Shown here piece after piece: positions 1,450 through 56,619 of a stretch of DNA of 64,000 nt. The notes below the pieces were generated by a model. It was given only the letters and a program-made list of their open reading frames with translations, did no database searches and had not been told where the DNA came from. The number at the start of each line of letters is the position of its first letter. Position 1 is the stretch's first letter. Position numbers and translations under genes: made by a program. The stretch lies in NCBI GenBank assembly GCA_026770705.1, contig JANJGN010000131.1:372001-436000 (forward strand). Direction: 5' to 3'. This DNA comes from Isurus oxyrinchus (lineage: Eukaryota).

Positions 1450-2351
1450 TGAACATACTGACTATTGTGACCCTGTCTCGGGGAAAGTGCGGTCTCTCAA
1501 AATGTGTTTCCCTTTACCTGGTGTCCATGGCAACCGCGGATCTACTGGTCGTTATCCTTGATCTCATATTCAGGCAAATTGCTATTCTTTACTGGGCTCA
1601 GTTTCAGTTCATGTGGAGGTTTAAAGTGTGTAATATCCATGCAGTCCTGCTTTATTCAGCCACAGATTGTTCTGTCTGGTTCACAGTCTCTTTCACCTTT
1701 GATAGATTTCTGGCTATTTGTTCCCAGAAGTTGAAAACAAAATATTGCACCCAGCATACGGCGGCTGTGGTTCTCGGAACAGTCAGTCTGCTATTCTGTG
1801 TGAAGGATACATTCTGGTACTTTATGTATGTAGGTCAATATTCGCTTTCCAATGCTCCTTGGTTTTGCACATTAGTGACGGATGCTGAATTCTCATCAAT
1901 GTGGGCAGCAATCGAATGTCTTCATTATATTTTAACACCATTTGCGCCATTTGTTTTGATTTTGATGTTGAACGCTTTAACTGTCAGATATATTTTAGTG
2001 TTGAGCAGAGCCCGCAGGAGACTCCGGGCTCACTGCAGTGGGGAGAGACCCAGGGACCCACAGATGCAGAAACGCAGGAAATCCATCATTTTACTGTTTG
2101 CTTTATCTGGGAATTTTATCCTGTTGTGGGTAGTTTTTATGATAAATTCTGTTTGTAATAGGTTATATGTGTTAGATGCTATTCCTGCATACCTTCCTAG
2201 GTTTGTGCAGGAACTGGGATTTATATTTTAGCTCCTGAGTTGTTGCACTAACACGGCCATTTACGCAGTGACCCAGACTCAGTTCAGAAATGAGCTGAAG
2301 AATGTGGTGAAATATCCCTTTTCTGTAATTTTTAAATTTATTAAACAGTGA
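1450..2351 (+). pseudogene. GPR139/GPR142-like class A GPCR, exon 2, premature TAG in TM7 (locus 1; exon 1 not found in window)
   Basis: Polypyrimidine tract plus AG acceptor at 1448-1449 (phase 1). Motifs: LYLVSMATADLL (TM2), SVWFTVSFTFDRFLAIC (TM3), LTPFAPFVLILMLN (TM5), RRKSIILLFALSG (TM6). TAG at 2229-2231 stands where the intact paralog has CAG. The frame continues LLSCCTNTAIYAVTQTQFRNELKNVVKYPF to TGA 2349-2351. Confidence 0.9.
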
Positions 2352-5857: not shown

Positions 5858-8800
5858 CCCTGGGGTGATGTCCAGCGAGTTCAGGGAGATGGTATCAGTA
5901 GGAATGAGCTGATCAGGAATACAGTTCATTATCAAAGCAGAAGGGAGAATGACAGCGCTAATGGATTTAACAGAAAAGGTGGAAGTGGAGAGTCGGCCTG
6001 TGTTTACTGGAATAAGGGCCATGTATATGCTGAACGGAAAGGGGTGTGGCAGGGCGAGGTGCAGGCTGCGTCTGTTTGTGTATTTAAGAGAAAATGGAAA
6101 GGCAGTGTCTCAGTATCCGATCGGCCCCAGGATCTGTGAACAAGCCCCATGTTTATGGTTACTTGCAGCATAAAGTTGGACCCCATCTTTGAGTATTTTG
6201 ACGGTTTTGAACCCCCACCCCCCCCCCACCCCGCACCCCCCCCCCCACCCCCGTATGTCCAATAGACCTAATGCTCTGTAATAATTTGCAGGATTTGTAC
6301 TTAATAATACAGCAGTGCCAGACACGCCCCAGCCCCTGGAAACATCCCTTGGTTTGTGCTCCGTATTCTGCCTGTGTTATATATCTAGCCTGTGGCATCC
6401 CCACTTCAAAATGTTTAATCGGACATTGCAGAGGGATCTTGAACAATTTTCTGACCCTGATTGCACCAACGGTGGGAGTGTTTGATGGGGTATTTTAAAG
6501 GATGTTTTCTGCTCCAATTTCCTGTCCTATATCAGCCTCCGATGAAGCCGAACCCTACAGTTTAGAATTGCCAGACATGTGTCTGTGAGCGCCCAGAGTG
6601 AAATCACCGAGGTGACCCTCCCTGTTCAATCATTCCACCTCGGGCAATAGCCAGAACCAGGCAGAGGTAAAGGTCTCCTTACACGGATGGGGCGATGGGT
6701 GTAAACAGAACCCCGACAGGAATGGTAAAACAGGGAGAAATGTGTAACCGGGAAAATGCAGCGGTGTCGATGGGCCTTGGGGAAAGGAATTCAGCAAAGT
6801 CACAGTTAGTTCACTTTTCATTCCAGATTTATTAGTAATATCAGAGAATATTTCACAGGAAATTTTATTTTAAAGTTAACAGAAGTGAATATAATGCCTG
6901 AGGTCACGTTGGGAACAGAACACATGCGCTCTGATTTGGTAAATTGTATGTACCACTGGAACATAGATCAGAAAGAGAAAACTGAGGCTCAAAGGAAAGG
7001 GAAGGGGGTAATAACGAATAACGAATGAAAACGTTACTTAATTACAATTCAAATCCTAACTCCAGGGAAATTAGATGCTACAATTACATTACAACCATTT
7101 TCATCTCACACCTTTCATACATGAAATCGGAAATACTGCTACAGGTTCGGTTACAGATTCGGGATCACAAAGTGAAGACATTTCACCTTTAGAATCACCA
7201 AGAGAACAGATTTTATATTGGAATAGAGAGACCTGAAAAAACAGCTGAGGAAAAGCTACGAGGTCCAAATTCAACCGATCACTTGATCTGTAAAAGAAGG
7301 AGACAATAATGAAGCAGATATTTATGATCAGGTGCATTTATGTTATTACTTTTAATTGTTGAAATGTTTAGAAAATTTTCAGACCGCTTCTGCCAGATTG
7401 TAGCATGAGTGGATTGAATCTTCTCACCTTTACCAGAGTGACGGCAATGCTGTCGAAAATGCTCAGGAAGCACAGGACGATGAATGTTAGAGATTTTGTC
7501 CAGATGTTCCCGTTATCGTCCTCATAGCCTTCAATCCAGATGTGGTCTGTGGAATCTACACTGATATTACCGAGGGGTTGGCCAATGGGAACCTCAATTA
7601 ATCTCAGCAAAAAAAAAAATAACGACAAGAAATCATATAATACATTAAAAATTATGTGATGTCGGAATGAAGCTGGAATTTATCCATGTGAAAGTACCTG
7701 TTATTATATAGAAACAGATAACACTCACGAGGAGAAAGATGGAAAGCCAAGGTGTCACGTCGACGCCATTTCATCGGAACATTCACGTCTTCAGCATCCA
7801 GTGCCTTTTGTTATGTTTATGCCATTGCTTTTTTGACTTGTGCACGTTTGCCTACCATTTTATAGCCGTTTATTTAATTGAGGATAAAATTATTAATATT
7901 TTATTTCAGTTTTGCGGTAGCTAAATGGATAACAAAGTTTAGCATTGCACTGCACGGATGGAGGCCAGTACATGCATTATTCCTGTTCCTGAAAGTGCTA
8001 TTCCATTTGTCCGGTTCCAATGCTCTTTCTCATAGTAATTTATTTTCCTTTCTAAATAGTGATTCGTTTTTGGAAGAAATATTATCCAGTCTGCTTCTAC
8101 CACGTGTTCAGCTTGTGCATACACAGGTCACCATGAATAACTTATTTAAAAAGTCCAGATATCCCCAGTGGTTTTTTAACCGCTCCCACCAAAATAAAAC
8201 AAACAGAAAAGAAAAGCCGAGCGCAGGAATTGAATATAGTTATTACTACGGGTGCCAAGTAGGAGCGATAACCCATGGGGATAGCAACTTTAGCCACCAT
8301 TTACCACAATGGACTTGAATGAGCTGATCTCAGTGTTGGGAAGTATAGTATAAAACATTTGCGTACCACGCTAATTTAGGAAGGGCTGAGGTTTTGCTTA
8401 TGCTAAGGATAAATGTGACCAAATGCAAGAATATCAAAAACTCGTGAGGATAAATGGCAAAGTAATTTGATTCTGAACAAGATTGAAGTGGTGTAATTTG
8501 GTAGGAAGATTAAGCCGAGGAAATCTACTGGTTGGAAATTATTATCTTAAATGAGATTAAGACTCGGGGTCATCCAGAATGGTCGTGCTTCAAAAATCAA
8601 GGAATTCCCATTGAGATAAATGCCGCAACATTTGCAGATGATTGGGAAATTTCACCTGATTAAATGTTCCAAGATAAATTTTTCACGAATATGTCCACTG
8701 AATAGTCCACGCATGTTGACTGAAAGTCCAATCAGCACGTCCATAAAACTCCCCTAACACTTTTCAGTTTCGTTGATAGCTCATCGACCTGAAACAGTTA

Positions 8801-19348: not shown

Positions 19349-21717
19349 TCATTTAAAAAATTTAACAATCAGACTCAATGGATATTTCACACCATTCTTT
19401 AACTCCTCTCTGAATTTACTCTGGGTACCTGCCTAAATAATGGGGTTGATGCAGGAACTTAAAAGCTACAGCATAAGTCCGCATTCTTCCAGTATAACAT
19501 TTGATTGATTGAAATTCGAGCCATCGAAATAACTAACGCTGGCAATTCGTGCGTAGAGGAAAGTTATAAGAGCGAGAAAATATAACAGGATGAAACTTCC
19601 CGAGATGGCAAAGAGTAAAACGATGGACCTTCTCCTCTTCTCCATCTCTGGGTCGCTTTGTTTCTCGCTCTTGCTGTGGGCTCGCAGTCTTCTGCGGGCT
19701 CGACTGGCCACAACAATGTGCCTGACCGTCAGAACATTGAGCAGCAAAATAAGAACGAATGGGAGACAAGGGGTTAAAACGGCATTTATGCTGTCATATG
19801 CCACCCATCCGGGTGACAAATAATATATTGGCTTTAGTTTGCAGTACCAGGGTGTATTGTCCGTGATAACAGAATGTTCACAAGCAAAGTACAAGGGTAT
19901 TTTTTTAGCACAATGCACAACGCAGACAGTTCCTATGACCACAGCTGCCGATTTCTTGGTGCAATATTTGGTTTTCAGCTTCTGACAACAAATGGCTACA
20001 AATCGATGAAAGGTGAAAGCAACTGTCACCCAGACAGAAGAATCCCTGACGCCATATATGAACACAAGACTAAGAGCAAAGGCCGGAGTGATGGAGAGGA
20101 AACTGAATGGGAAATATGTACCTACAATCCGGTTTAACATCACAGCAAGGATCATGATCAGGAGATCCGTCACGGCCATGGACATCAGGTAGTATGTGAT
20201 ACATCCAGTGAGACCGCATCTTCCTCGAGACAGGATCACAATTACTGCCAAATTAGCTGTGACAGAGGAATATAACCAGTAGGTTTGCGGTGGGGACAAA
20301 TGAATATAGAACAGGAAATGTTGATAAACTCACAAATACAGCATTGGTCATGAAAAGAGAGCAATGTTCCCATTTCAGTCCTATGACTTATATGCTCCAG
20401 TGGAGAAAGAAAGACTCTTTCCAAAATGCAGCAAATTGTCAATACTGTGCTGATTTACAGGAAGAATGCAGGCTCGGCCCTATAGTGAATATTCAAATTG
20501 CTGCATTGTTACTCAGTTAAATGAAAAACGATCAAATATCCTCCTGCTTGCTGTTTAGAGAAGAACAGGCTAGGACATTGGAAACAGAAAGGTACGCAAT
20601 ATTAAATCGACCTAAGAATTTGACAGAAACTGAGTAGATGGCGTTGAATGGAATTAAATACAAAGTGTTACTTTTGTGGGCATAATCCAGCAAATGAGAA
20701 CAGCTAAAATGAAAAAAAAAACTCCTTTGGAAGGAAATAAAAGGTAACTAAAACTCCTGAGTTATGATGACGTGCAGTGAACACAACTGTCCTTCACAGC
20801 AGGGAGGAAATCCACACACATTTTAATGTCCAGTTGCTGTTAAATTGAAAGACGTCAAGCTTTAGAATCAAAATGGCCTGGATTCAAGCCCAACTTCAGC
20901 TCCCTGAGAATTCCTCTCCGCCCAGGGTGCCAGGTTTCCGCTAAGGCAAGAAACCCTGGGCCAGTCATTTAATATTCAGCACAGATTTATCAGATAAATA
21001 CTGTTCATATTCCAGCGAAATGTTAAAGGGAAAAGAATGAGATAATGCATAATACAAATACAATTCCTCTGTAATAATTCACCCACGGTGACAATGCCGT
21101 TGAAACAATAGAAAAACCTTTCCTCAGTGGTAACAGCGTTATACATTACGCTTTTTGAAAAATACCAAGAATAAAATAAAAGAACATCTAAAACCTCGAA
21201 CGGTGGCAGTTAACAGATGAAAGTGTCCAATTAAACTGACTAAATGTTACTAGCTCAGGGAAGATAGTGCATTGTCACTGCTGAATTATTATTCTTGCAT
21301 TGGGGAGAAACTATGTTCAAGGGAAGAAATGACACAGTCAAACTTGAGCGACTCGGCATGTGATGACGACTAATCATGTCAGTAAAAGAAAACAATTGTG
21401 TTGATAAAATGGAGAATTAAATTAAGCATTTCCCTTGAAGTGGAAAAAAGTCACATTGTCGAGGGTGATAAAGTGGGACGATGTCGCCGTAATGTTGATA
21501 GATTGTTCTGTTTAATGGGAGAACGAATATCGTACCATGTAGAAGCAAAGCTCCTAAATACGAACAATGATTCACTAAAATGAAAGCAAACCAAAGAGAA
21601 GTGATTAAACAATGATTTCAATAACATAGCAAACCAAAATACTTAACCTGGAATCCCGATCGCTGCAATGACGGGATAATATATGATGAAAATAAGACCT
21701 TTTGGCAATCCGTGCAT
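19349..21717 (-). pseudogene. GPR139-like GPCR pseudogene (locus 2): exon 1 21717-21648, exon 2 20256-19349
   Basis: The 70-nt exon 1 encodes MHGLPKGLIFIIYYPVIAAIGIP and ends at a GTTAAGT donor; the acceptor is CACAG. The 7TM frame has DRF changed to HRF, TAG at 19466-19468 (TM7 Gln) and a second TAG replacing the Tyr of NPIIY. Normal end is TGA 19349-19351. Confidence 0.92.
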
Positions 21718-21764
21718 TTCTGTCACCAGCTGCGAGTGTGTTCTGCACCACAACTAAAGACAGT

Positions 21765-21866
21765 CAGAGATATATCTCAAGCCAGCCTCCAGGGAGACAA
21801 TTAGACGCTTTGATCTTTTGCAATAATTACGCTAATTGAAACAAAGATGCTCGTGCTGCAGCTGAC
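21765..21866 (-). promoter_or_regulatory. Conserved promoter of locus 2: E-box, TAAT sites, HD plus O/E-like composite, TATA-like element
   Basis: Minus strand: CAGCTG 21864-21859, CTAATTG 21804-21798, TCCCTGGAG 21795-21787 (-78 from ATG) and GATATATC 21776-21769. Confidence 0.7.
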
Positions 21867-22784
21867 AGGAAATTATTTTTATTTTGACGGAGTAGAAGGC
21901 TCTTCAAGCTCACTGACATTGTTCTGGAGGAACATCCTCACAAAGTGCCCTTCTGTCTTCCACATTAACACAAACCTACATTGATGTTTCTTTATCATCT
22001 GTCCTTTACCACAACCGTTTCCCGCCGCTATAGTGAAAACAAGAACTCTTCCATTGCTACCTACTCCCCAACTTCGATGTAAAGTCATGGATCTGAACCT
22101 TTTACCGTTTTCTCTGCACAGATGCTGAACGGTCTATTGCGTATTTCCAGCATTTGCTGTCTCATTCTGTTCGCATTTGGTATGGAAATGTTCAACTCAT
22201 CACCTTTACTTAGCTTTCAAGTACTCAAATCTTCTTCACGGCTTCTTGCAGTGTGGATTATTCCATATCAGTTAAATTCATTGCAGACATGTCAAATCCA
22301 GTTGTAGTGATTGTGCATAGCTGTGTAGCTGTGAACGGCTACGTTTTACTTGGTCAGATGCAGTCAAGCGCTTATGCGTTAATTCTGCATAATTATAGAG
22401 AGTACGCTTAAACTCCGTAAACGGAGGTCCAGTTGAGCACGATTCTAGTTAATGTGGATCGTTCCAGTTCGGTATGGTTATGTGATGTGTCGAGGCTCCA
22501 TTTCTGCCACGTTACATTAATTCATGACGGATAAGGAAGGGTAAATGTGCACGTCCTTTTCCCGTAAATCGCTTTCCGTGGCGCCAGGCGAGATTATGCA
22601 CGGCTGCACTAAGTCTGCAAAGGCCCAGTTCAGTCATCTTGCAATGAATATGGACAGGCCCCATTTTAACTGCTATCTTCAATGCGCACATGTGAAGCAG
22701 TGTTATAAATCTTGTGCAGATAGTTAATTCCTCATGCTTTCTTCAGTGTGCGGAAAAAATTATCCACCGAAATATTGAAAATAG

Positions 22785-32507: not shown

Positions 32508-32665
32508 CTAACTAGCTGACTATCGTGATCCGTTCCAGAGGAAGATGTGGTCTTTGCAGATACGCAGAGTCCATGGCGGTGACAGATCTCCATGTTATTA
32601 TCATTACACTGATATTAAGCCGGTTTACGGCTGTTTATTTTCCAGTCAGTTTTCTGAACCACTCA
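32508..32665 (+). pseudogene. GPR139-like exon-2 5' fragment (locus 5)
   Basis: After the AG at 32506-32507 it reads (A)N*LTIVIRSRGRCGLCRYAESMAVTDLHVIIITLILSRFTAVYFPVSFL, homologous to TM1-TM2-ECL1 of the paralogs, then breaks off. Confidence 0.85.
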
Positions 32666-33570: not shown

Positions 33571-34859
33571 GACTAATGTAATCCTGGCCTTAACTCCATT
33601 TTCCTGTCAGACTGAGTAACCATTGGATCTCTTGTCGATCAATAATTTGTCTAACTATGCCTTGAATATATTTAGTGCCCCTGCCGTCTCTTGTTTTCTG
33701 GAGAAGACAATTCCAAAGTCTCCAGAACCTCCTCATCCCCTGGTACTTTGCCTATGAACCTTCCTTTATCATTAACAATAGACCTGGATTTTGCCGTGGA
33801 AAATCACAATGAATAAAATCTCTCCGGCCGAGATCAGTCTGCACTGAAAATCATGCTACAGAACTGCAATTACGCAAATTGAATGTAACCTCACTGATCA
33901 AGACATCTGCACACGAAGCATAGCTGCTGGGAAATTAAAAGGTTCACAGTGATCCATTGGGACTGTCCACCACAGTGAACCACAGAAGGTCAAATTAAAA
34001 GTAAGAATGCAGAACTAAACCAGTCCAGTCTGAATGCAAATGTCCATGTACACATTTATTAACACCGAGCTGACTTTCATAAATCTACACGAAACATAAC
34101 CATGCTCGGCCAGTCCTGTCTCCATCGAATACAGCAGTAATGAAATTGATTATTCTATATGGAATGTAATCACGCTGAAGTGAAATTTTCCACTGCAAGA
34201 AAGAAAGTGTTCACAGCCGGGGCTGTGCACATTGTACGTAGTTGTCTTCCACCGGACAAAGTTGACAATAATCGGGCAAAAAGTCGTCCATATACATCAG
34301 TGTAACAGGATAGAAATTGGCCTGTTCGTCCTGAGTGCAGCTGTGCACAATTTAACCTGAATGCAGTGAATGCAATTTCCTTTTCAAATCTCACAATGGC
34401 AAACTATGAAACAATGTAACTTCATCTGAAACAGATGGAAATGGGTTTGTACTCGAAAGAGTTACTGAACTGGACAGTCACACCAGCGTGATAATCTCCT
34501 AAACTGGTTTTCCACTAAACAGTGATTGCTAACGAGCTGAACAGGACTTTCTACATGGTATATAACCATGTTGATTTGGAGCGCTCCATCATTAATTTAA
34601 TCATGCTCAACAGGAGGTTGTCTTCTCTGAATGTGAGTGGACTGAGCTTAAACTGAAAGCACCAAGCACACACGTCCTGAACTGGATCTTGCCACACAAA
34701 ATGTAAATTCACACACCTGTGCACTTTCGTTATTGCCAGGATTGACATGGCTACACTAACTGAATTGAACTAGTCCACAATGGAAGTAACCGTGCCAAAC
34801 CAGGCATGCGCACAGTGAATATGACCGTGCTGAGCTGCACATTTCTACACTGAATGTAA

Positions 34860-36480
34860 ACACCCTGAATGGAATTAAACAGGAAACGATGGAAATACTC
34901 AAGATATCCGGCAGCATGTGACCTTTCATCAGATCAGTCAAAAGTTACAGATGGAACAGTTTTAATGCAAGTGTAGAGGCAAAAAACGGATTTGGGGGAA
35001 AATGGTTCAAAAGGAGATGCTTCTGGTAAATGGGAAAACAGGAGAAATCAAATGACAAAAGCAGTGATGGTCGAAGTCAAAGTGGAACAAGGAAAAGCAG
35101 AAGAGGAATGTCTAAAAGATGGCAAACTGTTTATAACAGAATCAAAATCAAGAAATGTTTTCCCAACGCAATAACAAAGAGCAAAGAAGGAAGAAAAATG
35201 CAGTGGGTAAGATCACGATTGTTGAAATTTATGGAAAATCCAAAAGCCTAGAAAGTGCCTGAAGGAAATATGAGATTTTACTCCTGAAGCACAGGTTCCA
35301 TTTCCTTGGAGCAGTCGGAGGGTTCAATGACAGTCATGTCAAAGTGAGAGCGGAACAGATAATTAGGTTGACAAGTGACCAGAAGATCACACTTGTGGAC
35401 CGAATGGATGTACCTGAGAAATTATCACCAATCTACATTTAACCTCCAGAATGTGGAGCAGACGGCATATTGAGCAGTTAACAGGGTATACTCAATAGAC
35501 AGAAGTTCAAACAAATCGATTTTCCATTTAGAAGCATTGTTTGGGACGTAGGACAGAGAGAAGGGCAGGGAGGCAGGGGCTGGCGTTGCATGTTCATTGC
35601 GTGCATGGGAATGTTCTTCGGAAAAGGAAGGGTTGGATTGATTTTGGAGGAGGCAAGTGCGGAGTGGAGCAAAGACCCATTCTCAATGTTAAAGAGTAGA
35701 AGTGAGTTGGGCATATTGGGCAGTGACAACATGCCGATGAGTTTGAAAATGCAGAGGTGGAACAAATGATACAAGAGATGTGTGGAATGGTATGCAAGGG
35801 CAAGGAGAAGCCTATTGTGGATCCTGGAGGGGGAGAAGGTGTGAAAGCAGAAGTGTGAGACATGTTACATGCACGGCGCTGGGTTCTGTCAACCACGGTG
35901 CGCTGGAAATACTCAGCTGAAGTAATTGGAAGCTCTATTGGAGAAAGCTAGAAGGGATAATCGAACATATTCAGCAGAAACTGAGATTCTGAGAGAACGG
36001 AAAAGTTCCTTTCCAGTAAACGATGTGCATGGATGTGTATTCAAGATAGCTGGTTGTTGGTGAGCTTCTGTTGAATATTGGGCCATAGCCAATTGCCCGA
36101 TGTGTCCACATCAAAGTGGCAGAAGAAAATATAAATTTCAAACATGGAGCAAGTAAGTGCAGCGGGGGGATTACATTCCAAAGCAAACGTAACCTCATTT
36201 TCCAGTTCGGGGGTTGAACGAGATCAATACTGATCTGGTCATGAATATACCAGGCAAAAGTGTGATGGAGGTGCTTGAGTGGGACTGGATCAATAATTCT
36301 GCTACAAATCCATCCAAAAGCCAAACATAAATAGGACACAAGCCAATACCCATAGCATTGGCGTTTCATTTACAGAGTTAATTGAGACACTTTTCGTCGT
36401 GAGTTGACGTCCAAGCAGGCAGAGAGGCTGATGATGGATGGCTACTGATTGGTTCCTCATTCCAGAAGGAAAAGGGAGCC
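34860..36480 (-). mobile_element. Decayed Penelope-like element remnant
   Basis: Terminal motif 'tggaaatactcaagatatccggcagcatg', similarity around 35220-35300 to the GIY-YIG tail at 61480-61580, and a minus-strand 'gccaatgctatgggtattggc' resembling RT G.AMG. Confidence 0.5.
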
Positions 36481-36728
36481 ACATTACACGTGATCCATGT
36501 ACACACGGGCTGAAAAATGATCAAGACTGAGAACTTTGTAATGTTTTCTTGCGGGGTTTAAAGCCATGGATGTTCGTGCATAGTGCTCACTTTCACAATT
36601 ACAATGGCTTATTTGGCTTGTTATTTAAATTTTAGGAAAAAATGCAACTTGGACCGTACTCTCCTGTCGCGCCAATGTCCTTGAAAACAGATTCCATTCC
36701 ATCAAAAATATAAACGCGAGCGTGGCAG

Positions 36729-36825
36729 CAGCTGCACTAAAATGTTTTTTTCAGTTAGTGTAATTAATGTAAAAAGCCAAACCTTCTCATTGTCTCCCTA
36801 GAGTCTGACATCATGTATAAATCTA
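36729..36825 (+). promoter_or_regulatory. Conserved promoter of locus 3: E-box, TAAT sites, HD-like plus O/E-like composite, TATA box
   Basis: CAGCTG 36729-36734, TAATTAAT 36761-36768, CTCATTG 36786-36792, TCCCTAGAG 36795-36803 (-78) and TATAAA 36816-36821 (-57). Confidence 0.7.
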
Positions 36826-36872
36826 ACAGTCTTTCGGTGTAGCACAGAGCCCACTTGGAGCTTATGAGAGAA

Positions 36873-39100
36873 ATGCATGGGATACCAAAAGGTCTGGTGT
36901 TCGCCATTTACTATCCCATTCTTGCAGCTATCGGTATTCCAGGTAAAGTATTAGGGTTAGTTACCAGTTACCAGAATGATTTTTCACTCTATCACTTCTT
37001 TAATTTAGTTGTACTGCTTCTCTATGATTCACCCCATTAACAGGATAATTTGTTTTTTTATAATGTTTTCCCTTTTTTGCAGTAGCCTTATCTCCAACGT
37101 TTGGTGCATTCTTCTTTTAAATGAGATTTAACCTTCCCTTTCCTTGCAATATTACTGGTCATTACTGGTCTCTTTTCTCCACTTTAAGGCTACAATTTCT
37201 CCCCTTCACGAGAACAGTTTCTTCCCATTGCCACTATACTTACTTCCATTTCAGGGATTACTATGTTTGCTTCGTCAATGCCGTTTCATCTCTTTAAATA
37301 AAACTTTTCTGCCAACTTAGCAGTGCCGCCTCTCAGTCTAAACGTAATTAGATGTTGTTATTGTCATTATCAATGTGGGCGAAGTATTTAGCACACTAAT
37401 ATCACAGTGCAATGTAAATCAATTGTATTATTGACACTGTCACCATGGCTGATTTATCACGCTGTAAATGTAGCTCTATGGTGTTATTGACACAGCTGTT
37501 GAATTACCTCACTTTGCCATGTGCATATATTGCTCCTTGCGCTGGAATGTGAATAGCAGCAATTTCTTAAGTAAGATTTTGTATTCACGACCGGTCCTCA
37601 GTCTTTTGTTTTAGCTGAAATATAGCATATCGGGCAGTGCAACGTTGCTGAAGTCCAACAGTTGGGCTTGAACGCTAAACCTTTTGACTCAAAAGTGAGA
37701 TTGCTGTAAGCTGAGTCATAGTAAGCATGATTAGCTTTACTCGTGGCTGTGAAGCCTTGTTCCTTTAACTTCGAATTGTTACAACTCAGATGCATCACAT
37801 CTCCTTCATCTTCTTTTCAGTTAAGTAGTAGCTTTTTTTTTGCTGAACTTTTTTCAAGCTCTATAATGTATTTGTTAACCTTCGATTTTCCAATGTTTCA
37901 GAGTATTGTTACATTTTCCCGTCTCTAAACGTTGAATGAGAACAACATTGACTGTATTTCAGGGTCACAATGCAGGACGTTCAATGTTCACCTTGAGTTG
38001 GCCCTTAGTGTTGCTGATAGTACAGAACAGATTGCTGTGTTTTAGGATATTTTCCTCCAGATCATCTTTCTGACATGCTAACTTGTTCCTCTCTTTTCAA
38101 CTGCTGCCTGACTGAGAATTTCCAACATTTTATATTCTAAATTTCTTTCCCAAAATTGGTTATTCGCTGGCTGCGTTTCGCTGTCACAGCTAATCTGGTC
38201 GTGATTGTGATACTGACTCGAGGAAGATGCGGTCTCTCCAAATGTATCACTTACTACTTGATGTCCATGGCTGTGACGGATCTTCTTGTCGGGATCACAG
38301 TTGTGATATTAAACCGGATTATAGGTATTTATTTCCCGTTCAGTCTCCTGGCCATCACTCCGGTCTTCAGCCTCAGACTTGTGCTAAATTATGGAGTCAT
38401 CGATTCTTCTGTCTGGGTAACAGTGGCTTTCACCTTTGACCGATTTGTAGCCATTTGCTGCCAGAAGCTGAAAATTAAATATTGCACTGAGAAAATGGCG
38501 GCTGCGGTGATAGCAACTGTCTCTGTACTTAACTGCGTTAAAAGCATTCCCTTTTATTTTATGTGTGAACCTGCCTTTATCATTGACAATATACCCTGGC
38601 AATGCAATTCAAAATCAATATTTTATACGGCACCTGAATGGGTCGCTTATGAAAGCATAATCGCCGTTTTAACCCTTTGCCTCTCCTTCTTCCTTATTTT
38701 ACTGCTCAATGCTCTGACCATCAGACACATTGTAGCGGCCAGTCGAGCCCGCAGGAGACTCCGGATCCAGAGCAATGGAGAGAATCAAAGTGACCCAGAG
38801 ATGCAAAAGAGAAGGAAATCCATGGTTTTGCTCTTCTGTATCTCGGGCAGTTTCATCCTGTTACATTTGTTAAGACTTATAAACTTCCTCTATGTCCGAA
38901 TTGCGAATCTTAGCTATGTAGACTCTACCAATTTCAATGAATCAAATTTTCTTATGGAGGAAAGCGCACGTATGCTTCAGCTCCTGAGTTCTTGCATCAA
39001 TCCGTTTATTTATGCAGGGACCCAGAGTAAATTCAGAGAAGAGTTAAAGAATGGTGTGAAATTCCCATTGAACCTGCTTGTTAAATTATTTAAAAGATGA
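36873..39100 (+). CDS. Intact GPR139/GPR142-like class A GPCR (locus 3), join(36873..36942,38190..39100), 326 aa
   Basis: Exon 1 encodes MHGIPKGLVFAIYYPILAAIGIP with a GTAAAGT donor; acceptor CACAG at 38185-38189; 70+911=981 nt open. Motifs: GIPAN, YYLMSMAVTDLL, SSVWVTVAFTFDRFVAIC, RRKSMVLLFCISGSF and LLSSCINPFIY. An in-frame upstream ATG lies at 36864 and AATAAA at 39105-39110. The family is recognised from motifs; this is a paralog, not an assigned GPR139 ortholog. Confidence 0.93.
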
Positions 39101-52473: not shown

Positions 52474-55400
52474 TTATCGTCCAAATAATTTAACAATTTC
52501 AAGTAGTGGATATTTCACCCCATTCTTTAACACCTCTCTGAATTTACTCTGGTCCCTGCATAAATAAACAGGTTTGCGCAGGAACTCAAAAACTGAAGCA
52601 TGTATGCTTTTTCCTCAAGAATGAATGTTGAAAGATTGATTTCCGAGCTTGATAAGTATTTAACATTTCCAATTTGCACATAGAGGAAAGTTATAAAAAG
52701 TAACAAATATAACAGGATGAAACTTCCCGATATACAGAAGAGTAAAATGATGGACTTTTTCCGCTTCTCCATCTCAGGGTCACGCTGATTGTCTCCATTT
52801 CTCCGGGTCTGGAGTCTCCTGCGAGCTCTACTGGCTGCGAGAATGTGTCTGACTGTCAGTACATTGGGCAGTAAAATCAGAATGAATGGGAGACAAGGGG
52901 TTAAAATGTGATGAATGCAGTCATAGGCGATCCATGCAAGTGAGGTATAAAATATCACTTTTACATCGCAGAACCAGGGCACATTGTCAACTATGTACAA
53001 AGATTCGTATATAAAATACTGGAAGGTGTTTTTGACACAGCTGATTGCGCAGATTGTCCCTATAACTCGTGCCGCCGTTTTTTTGGAACAACATTTTACT
53101 TTCAGCTTCTAGCAACAAATGGCCACAAATCGATCAAAGGTGAAAGCTGTAGTTAACCAGGCAGAGCTGTCTATGGCTGAATATATTAGGGCTTCACGGA
53201 GACTGCATACTGGTGTGATTGACAGGAAACTGAGTGGGAAATAAATAGCAGCAATCCGGTTCAATATCACAGCGGTTATAATGAGCAGGGGATCTGACAC
53301 CGCCAGGGATTGTAAATAATAGGTTATACAGGTGGAGATACCGCATTTCACTCGAGAAAGGATCACAATCACCGCCAGGTTAGCTGCAATAAAGAGAGAG
53401 AGAGAAAGAGAGAAGTTGGAAAGAGACTGAGTTTGTGTGTGTGTGAGTTTGGGATAGAACGAATACAGGAAGGTTACTGCTCAAACTATAAACAAATCAA
53501 CAATTGTATAGGATTCTGCATGAATTTGTACATTTGAGATGTGTTCCCCAGTTGCACAATTGCAATGGGCAAGTGTTTCAGCTTTGTAAATTGAAATCTT
53601 AATTCAATATAGGGCAGGTCAAAGTTATATGAATGTCAAATATTTTAATAAAAACTAATGGAGAACAAAAGACATCGTTAACACTAAGAAACCAACCTAG
53701 AAGTTTTGTATAAGCAAGAAGAAAGTGTAAGCATCTGCAAGGCATTGCAGGAAATAATGACGAAGGTAAGTAACAAAACAAGCAACAAGAAGTGTGGAAA
53801 TTAACAAGGGCGTGGATTATATCTCACTGAAGATCAATATAGTTCCTTTCCTATATAATAATTGGCAATAATTATTGAAAATTATTCGTTGTTGTGAACT
53901 TTGGGAATTAAACCTGCTCAAAAATATCGACATAAAGCGAGGAGTAAAGGGGCAATGAATGAGTTCTGATCTTCCAGACAGGGCGTTTGCCTGCATGTGA
54001 AGATACATCCTAGCTCCTCACATATAGTCAACTGGAAGATTGGTGTCGATCTGAACCTTTGGAAATGGCGGAAGCCGAAGTCTCCTTCCGAGTGAGGTCC
54101 CTCTTGCAATGCAGCACTGACTCCGTACTGCACTGCACTGTCGGGATCAACTATCAACGTTGTCCTGTAATGGATATTTCAAATCAAAACATTGCGCCTG
54201 GGCTGTGAAAGATGCAGCCAAGTAGGCAGCCTCATTCAATATGGACAAACAGCCGAGACGGGAAAATGTGGGACATTGCTCGGTGATATCAGCAGAAGGA
54301 AATTCCGGCGTCATCAGTGGTCAAGTCGAAGCATCAGCAGCAGTTGAAGAACCAATTAGTGTTGGAGACTGAGAGCAGAAACACACCTCTGTGATCGTGG
54401 TGCTAATATAGAATATTCATCAAAAGTCTATTATTACATTGTTCATACATCTGTCAAAAACCGGGTGCTCATGATGTCCTTCCATCAAATTCATTGGGGG
54501 AATATTGAATGTTACATTGCTCTCTATCAATGAAACATTCGTGAGAATTGTTCGATCATTGTCATTGTGAACAACACAACAGATTTACATTTGCACCGTG
54601 AAAACAGTGTGATAGCTCATCCACAGTTCGACTGTCAGTAACAGAAGATGATCCATTTCACAGTGTGTTTAAAGTGTGATAGCATAACCACAGTTCGACT
54701 GTCAGTAACAGAACACGAACATATTCATACTGTGATTAAAGTGTGATCACTCAACCACAGTTAGACTGTCAGTAACAGAAGGTGATCACATTCACACCGT
54801 GATTACAATGTGATAATTCACCTTCAGTAACGATACCGGAAACACAATGGAAAAACATTTAGACTGTAATGTCACTGTTAAAATACACCTGCAGTAACAG
54901 AAGACAATTACACTTGCACCGTGATTACAATGTGATAATTCACCTTCAGTAACGATACCGGAAACACAATGGAAAAACATTTAGACTGTAATGTCACTGT
55001 TAAAATACACCTGCACTAACAGAAGACAATTACACTTGCACCATGATTACAATGTGATAATTCTCCTTCAGCAACAATGCCAGTAACAGAATGGAAAGGC
55101 AATTGCACTGTGATAACAGTGTGAAAATACACCAGTACTAAATTGTGCAAAACACCGTTGAAGACGGTAATATAATACCACTTACAACAAAAAATTACAC
55201 CCTTATAAGGGGGATGTTATACCGCTAACAACGAGAAATTTCACCCAGAACAGGGTAATATTTTTCCATTAACAGCGAGAAATTGCACACTTTGCAGGGT
55301 GATATGATAGCACTTAAATTGTGAAATTTTGTTTTTAACTAGGTTATATTATGCCACTAACAGCGAAGAATTGCACCTTTCATAGCATATTATTAAGCCA

Positions 55401-55735
55401 TTAGCGGCGAGAATTTTAGGCAAAGGGAACAACTTATATTGTCAAAATTGAGACATTATACCTATAAAGTGGGTAAAATGTTCTTTTAGAGGGGTAAAAT
55501 ATACTTGTTAAAAGAGGGAAATTGCTCCATTAATGGGGAGAATTGTACAGATAAAGGGCGAAATGGGAGAATGGGTATAACGTTATGGATATACAATGCT
55601 TTTAAAAGGTAGAATTCCTGCAGATAACCGATTTCCGTATCAAAATACTAATTACAATACTTTACCTGGAACCCCGAGAGCTGCAAGGGCTGGATAATAA
55701 ATGGCAGACAGAAGGTCTTTTGGTGATCCATGCAT
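52474..55735 (-). pseudogene. GPR139-like GPCR pseudogene (locus 4): exon 1 55735-55666, exon 2 53383-~52474
   Basis: The 70-nt exon 1 encodes MHGSPKDLLSAIYYPALAALGVP with a GTAAAGT donor; acceptor TTGCAG. TAG at 53109-53111 directly follows DRFVAICC, and the same frame continues through TM4-TM7. A 1-nt deletion after IYAGT shifts the tail. Confidence 0.92.
54590..55130. repeat. Intronic tandem repeat: 67-bp units changing to 122-bp units
   Basis: 'ccacagtt(c/a)gactgtcagtaacagaa' at 54621, 54688 and 54755; 'gattacaatgtgataatt' at 54801, 54923 and 55045. Confidence 0.92.
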
Positions 55736-55782
55736 TTTCAACAAATGTTCTGAACGCCTTCTGCACATCACTGAAAGATTGT

Positions 55783-55885
55783 CACATTTATAACTGATGT
55801 GAAGCGCCAGGGAGTTAATTAGATGGTTTGATCTCTTGCATTAAATGCATTAATTTTAAATAAAAACAGTTCAGCCCAGCTGCTT
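55783..55885 (-). promoter_or_regulatory. Conserved promoter of locus 4: E-box, TAAT sites, HD plus O/E-like composite, TATA box
   Basis: Minus strand: CAGCTG 55882-55877, CTAATTA 55822-55816, TCCCTGGCG 55813-55805 (-78) and TATAAAT 55792-55786 (-57). Confidence 0.7.
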
Positions 55886-56619
55886 CAGGACTGACGTTTA
55901 TGTTTTGGGAGAATAAAAAGTTTTTTTTTCAATGGAGTTGACACCCAGAGATTGCAGCATGATCACAATTTATTTTCTCATAAAAAGATACCAGCCTGGA
56001 TTTTGTGGTCAGGGGTGAATGAGAGGGCTTTGGCCCTGATTGCTCTGGAGAATCCCAATTTGACTGGTTCACTGGCTGCCGCCAGAATTTAAGCCTTTGG
56101 CTGGTGCATGGCCCATGGACAAAATGATCTGTGAAATGTAGCATCGGGGTGACTTCTGACGATGGCCGCCCCTCCTGACGTCACGAGCCTGATACAAGTT
56201 CCCTGCGGTCCCTTTTCAGGCCAAAGGCAGATGGGTGTTTTGTTATGATTTAAAACACTTCTACAGACTTTAAAAATTTTCAAATTTTTCTAACACTTTC
56301 ATATATTTGAAAAGCCCTTTACACACTAAGTGAGTGCTGCACAAGTGAATGCACGCTGTGGTAGAAAATGTTCCGATGCAAGAATTTTCAAACAGGACAG
56401 GAAATGTGACACAGGCTGCAGGATTGTCATGTGATATTCGATGTTCACATGCTTGTCTAATGTTATAAGTTACAACGCGAGTTTTTAAAGCAGCCTCAAG
56501 ATAATTGTACACTTACTGCTTTGGAAATTATGCACTGCATCACCTTACTGCAATTCTCTCATAAATTCGGCCACGCTGCCTCTGGCTTTTCGTTTCATAG
56601 ACTTCCGTTTTCAACAGGA

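What the first reader, a model, noticed from the sequence alone, without database searches (positions are those of the whole stretch)
36729..36875. Odorant-receptor-type promoter (homeodomain plus O/E composite) fixed at -78 in three GPR139-like paralogs: candidate new chemoreceptor family
SEEN: the upstream regions of loci 2, 3 and 4 keep the same ordered motifs. CAGCTG lies at -147/-144/-147. An AT-rich TAAT cluster follows, then CTAATTG-TC-TCCCTGGAG (locus 2), CTCATTG-TC-TCCCTAGAG (locus 3) and CTAATTA-AC-TCCCTGGCG (locus 4), with TCCC starting exactly 78 nt before the ATG in all three. TATAAAT is at -57 in loci 3 and 4, and GATATATC is at the equivalent place in locus 2. KNOWN: adjacent homeodomain (Lhx2/Emx2) and Olf/EBF sites are the hallmark of mammalian odorant receptor promoters and enhancers. 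GPR139 and GPR142 respond to aromatic amino acids (L-Trp, L-Phe). Amino acids are major fish odorants, and cartilaginous fishes have few classical OR genes. INFERENCE: this expanded GPR139-like family may have been recruited as olfactory-neuron chemoreceptors, a class separate from OR, TAAR, V1R/ORA and V2R/OlfC. Caveat: paralogous promoters share sequence by descent, and the O/E matches are imperfect palindromes.
Basis: partly seen in the sequence, partly recalled or inferred. Interest (0 to 1): 0.92.

Follow-up and report, generated by a model that had tools for sequence, protein, structure and literature searches.

The report
Conserved promoter of shark GPR139-like receptors
Three neighbouring copies of a receptor gene family that has expanded enormously in sharks share a short, truly conserved promoter that looks somewhat like a smell-receptor promoter, but nothing available shows that the genes are used in the nose.

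Summary

**What holds:**
- About 200 bp upstream of three two-exon GPR139-like GPCR genes are homologous.
- For loci 2 and 3 this stretch is 70% identical, against 55% in their intron (p=1e-4).
- The intact gene's promoter changed half as fast as its pseudogene sister's (16 vs 31 changes).

**What weakens the reading:**
- Only locus 3 is intact; loci 2 and 4 are pseudogenes.
- The "O/E" site has a perfect TCCC core but two mismatches to the palindrome. Sites that good are no more frequent than chance (180 vs 199).
- The HD/O-E block is the best-conserved stretch, but not significantly so.
- In the intact gene, 3 of 10 lineage-specific changes hit the proposed cores.
- The residues GPR139 uses for aromatic amino acids are not kept.

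**Not tested:** tissue expression.

**Verdict:** a real, constrained TATA-type family promoter. The olfactory reading remains a hypothesis (about 0.3). The scan had already noted this layout on other pieces of this genome.

The parts
36673..36872 (+). Locus 3 proximal promoter (-200..-1), upstream of the only intact gene
   Evidence: Homology with loci 2 and 4 begins at about -200/-243. 70% identical to locus 2 against 55% in the intron. Profile hit E 4.6e-87.
36729..36734 (+). E-box CAGCTG at -144
   Evidence: At -147 in loci 2 and 4.
36760..36769 (+). Homeodomain-type site (GTAATTAATG), TAAT cores at -112 and -108. This is the one HD site intact in locus 3.
36786..36803 (+). HD-like heptamer (CTCATTG, TAAT core lost in locus 3), 2-nt spacer, then the TCCC-core O/E-like site TCCCTAGAG at -78
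   Evidence: Most conserved 19-nt stretch of the promoter, but not significantly so.
36816..36822 (+). TATA box TATAAAT at -57. The transcription start is inferred about 25-30 nt downstream and is not mapped.
   Evidence: The start-site position is an inference from general knowledge of TATA promoters.
36873..36942 (+). Locus 3 exon 1: ATG plus 23 codons and 1 base, followed by a GT donor
   Evidence: A 24-residue N-terminus of this type is present in 73 of 88 homologues.
38190..39100 (+). Locus 3 exon 2. In frame from 38192, 302 codons plus stop. Intact 7TM receptor.
21718..21917 (-). Locus 2 promoter: CAGCTG at -147, CTAATTG-TC-TCCCTGGAG with TCCC at 21795, GATATATC at -59
19352..21717 (-). 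Locus 2 gene body: exon 1 at 21717-21648, exon 2 in frame at 20254-19352. Pseudogene with TAG stops at 19468 and 19435.
55736..55935 (-). Locus 4 promoter: CAGCTG at -147, CTAATTA-AC-TCCCTGGCG with TCCC at 55813, TATAAAT at -57
52477..55735 (-). Locus 4 gene body: exon 1 at 55735-55666, exon 2 at 53381-52477. Pseudogene with a TAG stop at 53111 and a frameshift near 52550.
1452..2348 (+). Locus 1 exon 2, a more distant paralogue (47-50% identical in protein). Pseudogene with a TAG stop at 2229. Its exon 1 and promoter were not found in the window.
7060..7110 (-). Intergenic cluster of TAAT sites with TAATT directly abutting TCCCTGGAG. Either a promoter relic or an enhancer-like element.
   Evidence: Not matched by the promoter profile.

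Best explanation
The finding is the roughly 200-bp TATA-type proximal promoter of a tandemly duplicated family of two-exon class A GPCR genes. NCBI labels relatives of these genes 'probable GPR139', and the family is hugely expanded in sharks and rays.

The promoter was copied with each gene duplication. It has since evolved at roughly half the intronic rate with almost no indels. That is why the order and spacing survive: E-box, two or three TAAT sites, a TCCC-core site and a TATA box.

Inferred mechanism:
- A homeodomain factor at the TAATTA-type site(s) and a factor that reads the TCCC core (EBF is the leading candidate) act about 20 nt upstream of the TATA box.
- Together they give cell-type-restricted transcription starting about 25-30 nt upstream of the ATG.
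- Exon 1 supplies a 24-residue N-terminus and the start of TM1.

The expressing cell type is not shown. Olfactory neurons are the single most likely candidate, but at below even odds. In this window only locus 3 is a working gene; loci 1, 2 and 4 are recent pseudogenes.
For: - Motifs and distances verified. Three homologous promoters and no others in the window.
- L2-L3 promoter 139/198 identical with 2 gap columns, against intron 672/1213 with 212 gap columns and 3' flank 58-61%. Fisher p=9.9e-5.
- With locus 4 the promoter still aligns (66% over 289-342 nt) while most of the intron does not.
- Relative-rate test with locus 4 as outgroup: 31 changes on the pseudogene L2 branch against 16 on the intact L3 branch in -200..-1 (p=0.04). 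Exon 1 shows 8 vs 7.
- Gene structure and integrity. Pfam 7tm_1 E 3.2e-19.
- Family size: 1824 proteins at E<=1e-3 among 4988 candidates, and all of the best 120 come from sharks. 109 representatives of 50%-identity clusters at E<=1e-30. Rays and skates are included.
- Mouse OR promoters are enriched for O/E, HD and TATA motifs (Table 1 passage; passages).
Against: - Identity at 4-fold degenerate sites of exon 2 is close to promoter identity: 0.68 for L2-L3, 0.60 for L2-L4 and 0.615 for L3-L4. Against that yardstick the constraint is slight. Those sites come only from codons whose first two bases agree, so they may understate neutral change.
- Two of the three promoters belong to pseudogenes.
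- Indel-freeness of -150..+69 is only marginal (0 events seen, 2.9 expected, P=0.054).
- Across the genome, unitigs at least 80% like locus 3 pile up on exon 1 and exon 2 but hardly on the promoter. X1/X2 depth is 267-316 / 118-190 in the promoter bins, 1319 / 913 in the exon-1 bin, and up to 13656 / 4084 in exon 2. Family-wide, the promoter diverges faster than coding sequence.
- The transcription start is not mapped. In run X9 (RNA only by guess), two contigs of paralogues extend a median of 161 letters upstream of position 36884. If these are RNA, the start would lie further upstream for those copies.
Confidence: 0.7

Rival explanations
1. The promoter is an odorant-receptor-type Lhx2/Emx2 plus Olf/EBF promoter. 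The family is a so far unrecognised class of olfactory-neuron chemoreceptors in cartilaginous fishes.
For: - E-box, HD (including a TAATTAAT Lhx-type site), TCCC-core O/E-like and TATA motifs lie within about 150 bp. This matches the motif types enriched in mouse OR promoters (Table 1 passage: V$NOLF 6-7x, LHXF 1.4-1.6x, AP4 CAGCtg 1.98x, TATA peak at -60..-10).
- The core TCCCYNGRG of that O/E consensus is rare: 8 sites on both strands of 64 kb. It is met in loci 2 and 3.
- TAATT followed within 0-4 nt by TCCCNNG occurs 3 times against 0.82 expected (5 of 100 shuffles reach 3). One of the three is a non-homologous intergenic site.
- An unrelated receptor family (TAAR) uses Lhx2/Ebf composites. 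Mouse OR and TAAR enhancers work in zebrafish olfactory neurons, so the code is old (passages).
- The family behaves like a chemoreceptor family: a huge lineage-specific expansion, tandem clusters, and 3 of 4 full-length copies plus one relic dead in this window.
- The catshark has few OR, TAAR or ORA genes (passages).
Against: - The O/E-like sites have 2 mismatches to TCCCNNGGGA. Such sites are at chance level (180 vs 198.8 expected). None of the three appears among the 15 sites with one mismatch or fewer.
- Locus 4 also fails the R at position 8 of the MatBase core.
- The motif block is not significantly better kept than its neighbours.
- In the intact gene, 3 of 10 lineage-specific changes in -150..-30 hit HD or O/E cores (-119, -85, -73).
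- Composites are reported as enriched in OR enhancers, not promoters, and adding 2 bp impairs them.
- The catshark paper found no GPCR among its top 50 'brain & olfactory epithelium' genes and never mentions GPR139. That is weak evidence, since single receptor genes are lowly expressed.
- No expression data could be obtained here.
Confidence: 0.3
2. The same constrained promoter drives expression in a non-olfactory cell type, for example brain neurons (as for GPR139 itself), other sensory cells, EBF-positive lymphoid cells or germ cells. On this view the resemblance to OR promoters is generic to HD- and EBF-regulated genes.
For: - TAAT and TCCC cores are recognised by many factors. Young 2011 lists more than 10 homeodomain matrix families and an overlapping Ikaros matrix that hit the same sequences.
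- Shark 'olfactory' families are often expressed elsewhere. Catshark OR genes lack olfactory specificity and some peak in the ampullae of Lorenzini (passages). OR-kappa is expressed in immune cells (abstract only).
- GPR139 is a brain receptor (abstract of PMC5430874).
Against: Hundreds of fast-turning-over paralogues with many pseudogenes would be unusual for a neuromodulator receptor. No positive evidence points to any tissue.
Confidence: 0.35
3. Pure descent. The similarity is only what remains from tandem duplication. The HD and O/E look-alikes are chance features of an AT-rich stretch and have no motif-specific function.
For: - Promoter identity (0.56-0.76 per 50-nt block) is close to 4-fold-site identity (0.60-0.68).
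- The motif block is not significantly special.
- The fixed -78 distance is expected by chance fairly often.
- Pseudogene promoters carry the best motif matches.
Against: - The promoter is clearly better kept than the intron and the 3' flank of the same gene pair (p=1e-4).
- The intact gene's promoter evolves at half the pseudogene's rate.
- First readers noted the same layout on six other pieces of this genome. These are unchecked notes and not independent proof.
Confidence: 0.15

Closest known systems
Mouse odorant receptor proximal promoters (O/E plus homeodomain sites, frequent TATA)
   Same: Short, CpG-island-free, fairly AT-rich promoter (GC 35-43% in -200..-1). It carries HD-type TAAT sites, a TCCC-core O/E-like site and a TATA box within about 150 bp of the start, and an E-box of the CAGCTG type.
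   Different: - In mouse, sites vary in position between genes; here order and spacing are inherited from a common ancestor.
- The O/E match is core-only.
- No binding or expression data exist.
- The genes are two-exon with a coding exon 1, and they are unrelated to ORs.
Lhx2/Ebf 'composite motif' of OR enhancers (Greek Islands), the J element and TAAR enhancers
   Same: A homeodomain site and a TCCC site lie side by side in one orientation. The spacer is 2 nt in the three promoters and 0 nt in the intergenic element at 7062-7073.
   Different: - The composite is reported as enriched in enhancers and not in promoters, and as sensitive to a 2-bp insertion.
- Its exact letters and spacing appear only in a figure and a supplement that I could not see, so the spacing could not be compared.
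- The TAAT core of the composite is lost in the intact gene.
GPR139 (human orphan receptor for L-Trp and L-Phe; PDB 7VUG)
   Same: It is the closest solved structure by sequence (E 5.8e-8, 35.7 bits; the next family is at 4.3e-5). Both are class A receptors with a very short N-terminus and a DR(Y/F) motif.
   Different: - About a quarter of aligned residues are identical (my count, about 73 of 283, from the printed alignment).
- Pocket residues are not kept. 6x48 is Y in 69 of 89; 6x51 is F/Y/L in 75 of 89 and R in only 4; 7x38 is Y/F in 79 of 89 and N in 5 (residue roles).
- Single-copy 'GPR139' look-alikes of coelacanth and salamanders that sit next to the shark family score only 70 and 53 bits against GPR139. 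This lineage is therefore separate from true GPR139.
Conserved promoters of vomeronasal V1R paralogues in mouse (recalled from memory; no call)
   Same: Paralogues of a chemoreceptor family keep a recognisable shared promoter block after duplication.
   Different: Recalled only and not checked here. It is a different receptor family in a different taxon.

Membership tests
OR-type proximal promoter (homeodomain + O/E) | O/E (Olf/EBF) site within about 200 bp upstream of the start | tested here: inconclusive
   TCCC core in 3 of 3 at -78. The core TCCCYNGRG of the MatBase V$NOLF consensus is met in 2 of 3. All three have 2 mismatches to the recalled palindrome TCCCNNGGGA, a level found 180 times in the window against 199 expected.
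OR-type proximal promoter (homeodomain + O/E) | Homeodomain (Lhx2/Emx2-type TAAT/TAATTA) sites near the O/E site | tested here: met
   Each promoter has 3-6 TAAT/ATTA cores between -158 and -84 (6 in locus 2, 3 in locus 3, 6 in locus 4). The background is 0.65 cores per 60 nt. In locus 3 only the -112/-108 site keeps its core.
OR-type proximal promoter (homeodomain + O/E) | TATA box 10-60 nt upstream of a mapped transcription start | tested here: inconclusive
   TATAAAT at -57 from the ATG in 2 of 3 and GATATATC in locus 2. No start site is mapped.
OR-type proximal promoter (homeodomain + O/E) | Binding by Lhx2/Emx2 and EBF, and expression in olfactory sensory neurons | not testable with these tools
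   Runs are coded without tissue.
Greek-Island Lhx2/Ebf composite motif | HD and O/E sites juxtaposed at the stereotyped spacing | tested here: inconclusive
   The sites are juxtaposed with a 2-nt spacer in 3 of 3. The reference spacing is only in Figure 3A and Supplementary file 7 of Monahan 2017, which I did not see.
Greek-Island Lhx2/Ebf composite motif | Located in intergenic enhancers rather than promoters | tested here: not met
   The three sites lie 78 nt upstream of start codons. Only the extra element at 7062-7073 is intergenic.
GPR139/GPR142 subfamily | Orthology or close sequence relationship to GPR139 | tested here: not met
   It is the best solved match, but only at 35.7 bits. The neighbouring bony-vertebrate relatives score 70 and 53 bits.
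GPR139/GPR142 subfamily | Agonist pocket residues F109 3x33, W241 6x48, R244 6x51, N271 7x38 (Nohr 2017) | tested here: not met
   Family residues among 89 sequences: 3x33 is Y 68 / F 13; 6x48 is Y 69 / W 14 / H 2; 6x51 is F 44 / Y 16 / L 15 / R 4; 7x38 is Y 50 / F 29 / N 5. The mapping comes and the residue roles. H187 5x43 was not mapped because the TM5 alignment is poor.
Class A (rhodopsin-like) GPCR | Pfam 7tm_1 above the gathering score | tested here: met
   69.9 bits against a cut-off of 30.5, covering profile positions 2-260 of 260.
Vertebrate chemosensory receptor multigene family (as a kind) | Large lineage-specific expansion in tandem clusters with many pseudogenes | tested here: met
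   1824 hits at E<=1e-3. This 64-kb window holds four full-length copies plus a relic, of which 1 is intact.
Vertebrate chemosensory receptor multigene family (as a kind) | Expression in a chemosensory epithelium | not testable with these tools
   The tissue tables of the catshark paper are in supplements that I did not see.

The most novel reading that the evidence does not exclude
The GPR139-like expansion is the missing main odorant-receptor repertoire of sharks and rays. Each gene is chosen singly in olfactory neurons through an Lhx2/EBF-read promoter. Intergenic HD+TCCC composites such as the one at 7062-7073 act as Greek-Island-like cluster enhancers. If so, the OR-type choice machinery was recruited independently by an unrelated class A receptor family.
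Probability: 0.2. Interest if true: 0.9.

Novelty: new member of a known kind. Interest (0 to 1): 0.55.

Why it matters
Sharks are famous for their sense of smell, yet they have only a handful of OR, TAAR and ORA genes and a few dozen V2Rs (passages). A family of hundreds of fast-evolving class A receptors has no described function, and I found no mention of it in the papers I could search. It is therefore an obvious candidate to fill that gap.

A shared promoter with an OR-like motif make-up gives a concrete, cheap test. One can look for these transcripts in olfactory rosette RNA-seq, and mutate the TAATTA and TCCC sites in a reporter.

If the genes turn out to work elsewhere, the promoter still defines the regulatory unit of one of the largest lineage-specific gene expansions in cartilaginous fishes.

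Tried and rejected
**More promoters from other sharks.** Two scans of metagenome contigs found no relative: one with the exon-2 protein and one with a 17-sequence family alignment.

**Family-wide conservation through reads.** At 80% likeness or more, paralogous unitigs cover exon 1 and exon 2 but hardly the promoter. Only the best-supported differences were printed (40 shown, 225 not shown). No per-base profile of the promoter came out of it.

**Expression.**
- No listed holder is on record as RNA.
- X10 gave 0 contigs.
- X9 gave 18 contigs, none 95% alike or more, so paralogues only.
- One X9 contig reads on from exon 1 into intron-like sequence, which means unspliced RNA or DNA.
- Tissue is coded, so this says nothing about the nose.

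**Strict O/E palindrome.** Rejected as evidence.

**Octamer (POU) reading of the ATGCAAA-like stretch at -105.** Rejected by eye, because each locus differs there.

**CRE-like TGACATCA between the O/E-like site and TATA.** Present in locus 3 only, so rejected.

**Gene conversion as the cause of promoter similarity.** Rejected. Promoter identity (70%) is below that of exon 2 (79%) and there is no tract of near-identity.

**Literature.** Ten searches were run. Five aimed at the family and found nothing relevant. The scan's own index had no note on expression.

**Supplements.** I did not ask for any supplementary file. Two may bear on the claims:
- Supplementary datasets S7/S8 of the catshark paper (PMC11979771), for tissue specificity of these genes.
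- Supplementary file 7 and Figure 3A of Monahan 2017, for the composite's letters and spacing.

**Joined protein model.** The spliced protein (exon 1 joined to exon 2) was never built or searched. All protein searches used exon 2 alone. Exon 1 was used only as a separate query in a local tblastn.
Full report
**What is in the window.** The window has GC 41.6% and no N. It carries four full-length copies and one relic of a two-exon class A GPCR gene.

- Locus 3 is on the + strand. Exon 1 runs from the ATG at 36873 to 36942 and is followed by a GT donor. The intron ends with AG at 38188-38189. Exon 2 runs from 38190 to the stop at 39098-39100. It is the only intact copy.
- Locus 1 (exon 2 at 1452-2348, +) has one TAG stop.
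- Locus 2 (-) has two TAG stops.
- Locus 4 (-) has one TAG stop and a frameshift near its 3' end.
- Fragments at 32510-32656 and 33735-33806 are a further relic.

All protein searches used exon 2 alone.

**The observation.**
- CAGCTG lies at -147/-144/-147.
- TCCC starts 78 nt before the ATG in loci 2, 3 and 4.
- TATAAAT lies at -57 in loci 3 and 4, and GATATATC at -59 in locus 2.
- The three versions of the homeodomain-like heptamer, spacer and TCCC site are as written.

A profile built from the three upstream regions finds these three places and nothing else. Their E-values are 1e-80 or better, and the next hit has E 0.51. Locus 1's promoter is not in the window.

**Is it more than shared descent?** For the region as a whole, yes, moderately.
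- In a global alignment of loci 2 and 3, the promoter (-200..-1) has 139 of 198 aligned bases identical and 2 gap columns.
- The intron has 672 of 1213 identical and 212 gap columns.
- The 3' flank is 58-61% identical and exon 2 is 79%.
- The promoter-intron difference gives Fisher p=9.9e-5.
- Locus 4 still aligns with the others over the promoter plus exon 1 (66% over 289-342 nt) and over exon 2 plus 3' flank, but not over most of the intron.
- With locus 4 as outgroup, the promoter of the pseudogene locus 2 took 31 changes and that of the intact locus 3 took 16 (p=0.04). In exon 1 the counts are 8 and 7.

Three points cut the other way.
- Identity at 4-fold degenerate sites (0.60-0.68) is close to promoter identity.
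- The absence of indels in -150..+69 is only marginally unusual (0 seen, 2.9 expected, P=0.054).
- Over the 78 nt that fix the TCCC site, about one indel per pair is expected (my arithmetic). A 'fixed -78' is therefore not remarkable.

**Are the motifs themselves special?** This is not shown.
- The stretch covering the heptamer and the TCCC site is the best-conserved 19-nt window: 13-14 invariant columns, against 49% overall. The longest invariant run is CTCCCT.
- However, 94% of permutations of the invariant columns give some window as good.
- In the intact gene's own lineage, 3 of 10 changes in -150..-30 fall in the proposed cores. Position -119 turns CAATTAG into CAGTTAG. Position -85 turns CTAATTG into CTCATTG. 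Position -73 turns TGGAG into TAGAG.
- The proposed motifs cover about a third of that stretch, so they are not spared.
- The best motif matches sit in front of the two pseudogenes.

**How O/E-like is the site?**
- Against the recalled palindrome TCCCNNGGGA, each site has two mismatches.
- Sites with one mismatch or fewer number 15 in the window against 17.6 expected, and none is in a promoter.
- Sites with two mismatches or fewer number 180 against 198.8 expected. By that yardstick the match is worthless.
- Against the MatBase V$NOLF consensus printed in Young et al. 2011 (Table 1 passage), whose conserved core is TCCC followed by y-n-g-r-g-a-r, loci 2 and 3 fit TCCCYNGRG and locus 4 fails one position.
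- That 9-mer pattern occurs only 8 times on both strands of the window. The site is therefore a fair core match with a degenerate second half.

The same paper reports O/E sites 6-7 fold enriched, Lhx and other homeodomain matrices 1.4-1.6 fold, an AP4-type CAGCtg matrix 1.98 fold at low stringency, and a TATA peak at -60..-10 in 200-bp mouse OR promoters. A 2025 review says the same in prose (passages). In its types of motif the shark promoter does resemble an OR promoter.

In mouse it is the hallmark of OR enhancers and is said not to be enriched in OR promoters. Two inserted bases already impair it (Monahan 2017 passages; review). The composite's letters and spacing are only in a figure and a supplement, which I did not see.

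**The family.**
- Exon 2 is a 7tm_1 domain (E 3.2e-19).
- 1824 proteins match at E<=1e-3 among 4988 candidates.
- All of the best 120 come from sharks: Heterodontus above all, then Heptranchias, Rhincodon, Stegostoma, Scyliorhinus, Pristiophorus, Carcharodon, Chiloscyllium and Mustelus. They are 56-74% identical and mostly named 'probable G-protein coupled receptor 139'.
- Among representatives of 50%-identity clusters, 109 match at E<=1e-30.
- I looked up ten of these. At 37-55% identity they come from sharks, skates and a stingray. At 32-34% they come from coelacanth, salamanders and a teleost.
- The coelacanth and salamander proteins score only 70 and 53 bits against solved GPR139, and locus 3 scores 35.7 bits. 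The lineage is thus GPR139-like by nearest neighbour, not GPR139.
- In 73 of 88 homologues of 300-345 residues, the part before exon 2 is a 24-residue N-terminus like that of locus 3.

**The amino-acid inference.** Nohr et al. 2017 (abstract and passages) showed two things. F109, H187, W241 and N271 are needed for activation of GPR139 by L-Trp and L-Phe, with R244 binding the polar end. W241H abolishes the amino-acid response. I mapped these positions through the printed alignment onto 89 family sequences:

| GPR139 position | Family residues (of 89) |
|---|---|
| 3x33 | Y 68, F 13 |
| 6x48 | Y 69, W 14, H 2 |
| 6x51 | F 44, Y 16, L 15, R 4 |
| 7x38 | Y 50, F 29, N 5 |

The polar residues that hold an amino acid are mostly gone, so GPR139 pharmacology gives no guide to the ligands. 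Locus 3 itself has H, R and R at the last three positions, which is unusual for the family.

**Expression.** This is the decisive question and I could not answer it.
- The run search returned six DNA-like holders and eight small runs guessed to be RNA. All are of one coded organism, with no tissue given.
- I laid 3000 letters on X1, X2, X9 and X10 at 80% likeness or more. X1 and X2 gave 630 and 784 contigs, X9 gave 18 and X10 gave 0.
- In X1/X2 the summed depth is 267-316 / 118-190 in the two promoter bins and 1319 / 913 in the exon-1 bin. It reaches 13656 / 4084 in exon 2, against 51-383 / 59-168 in the intron.
- Dozens of paralogues are therefore at least 80% like locus 3 in coding sequence, but few are in the promoter.
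- None of X9's 18 contigs is 95% alike or more, so they are paralogues. One reads from exon 1 on into intron-like sequence, and two extend a median of 161 letters upstream of 36884. This is unspliced RNA or DNA, and the tissue is unknown.
- The catshark 'Sensory Shark' paper (passages only) found no GPCR among the top 50 'brain & olfactory epithelium' genes and never mentions GPR139. Its gene tables are in supplements that I did not see.

**Literature and earlier notes.**
- Five searches aimed at the family found nothing relevant.
- The scan's own index holds 142 notes with 'GPR139' on this genome. Six of them describe the same promoter layout on other pieces.
- Two of those were followed up with the same verdict as mine: a conserved promoter with no evidence for the nose.
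- These are unchecked AI notes. I use them as a lead that the layout is family-wide, not as proof.

**Verdict.** The finding is a real, moderately constrained, TATA-type proximal promoter shared by descent among members of a huge elasmobranch GPCR expansion that I did not find described in print.
- Its motif make-up is compatible with an OR-like Lhx2/EBF promoter, and olfactory neurons are the leading single guess (about 0.3).
- In this window the motif evidence is statistically weak.
- Two of the three promoters belong to dead genes.
- The amino-acid analogy fails.
- No expression evidence exists.

Noticed in passing
window 7060-7110 (- strand): Intergenic cluster of TAAT sites in which TAATT directly abuts TCCCTGGAG, the same 9-mer as in locus 2's promoter. 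There is no TATA box and no exon-1-like ORF downstream, and the promoter profile does not match it. It could be a decayed promoter relic or an enhancer-like HD+O/E element.
   Followed up: partly
window 2229-2231 (+) and 19468-19466 (-): Loci 1 and 2, only about 50% identical in protein, carry a TAG stop at the same codon, which is CAG (Gln) in loci 3 and 4. All four in-frame stops in the window's copies are TAG. This may be coincidence, gene conversion or a mutational hotspot.
   Followed up: no
window 32510-32656 and 33735-33806 (+): Two short fragments of a further GPR139-like exon 2 (53% and 58% identical over 53 and 24 residues). This is a heavily decayed fifth copy between loci 2 and 3.
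   Followed up: no
window about 34530-36670 (upstream of locus 3): Locus 2's -797..-354 aligns with locus 3's -2343..-1901 (60.6% over 467 columns). Locus 3 therefore has about 1.5 kb of extra DNA between that block and its promoter, probably an insertion.
   Followed up: no
window 36510-36822 and 38471-38641: The DNA-like runs X1 and X2 carry a version of locus 3 about 4-6% different from the window. It includes a 21-letter insertion behind 36667 and A>G at 36789, inside the degenerate homeodomain heptamer. This is either high allelic diversity or a very close paralogue.
   Followed up: no
window 38192-39097 (locus 3 protein): At the positions aligned to GPR139 6x48, 6x51 and 7x38, locus 3 has H, R and R, whereas 88 homologues mostly have Y, F and Y/F. 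The one intact gene here has an atypical predicted pocket.
   Followed up: partly
window 36884-36959 (exon 1), run X9: In the small run X9 (RNA only by guess), exon-1-like contigs reach a summed k-mer depth of 196 over 2 contigs. Exon-2-like contigs reach only 3-20. One contig continues into intron-like sequence. Unexplained.
   Followed up: no
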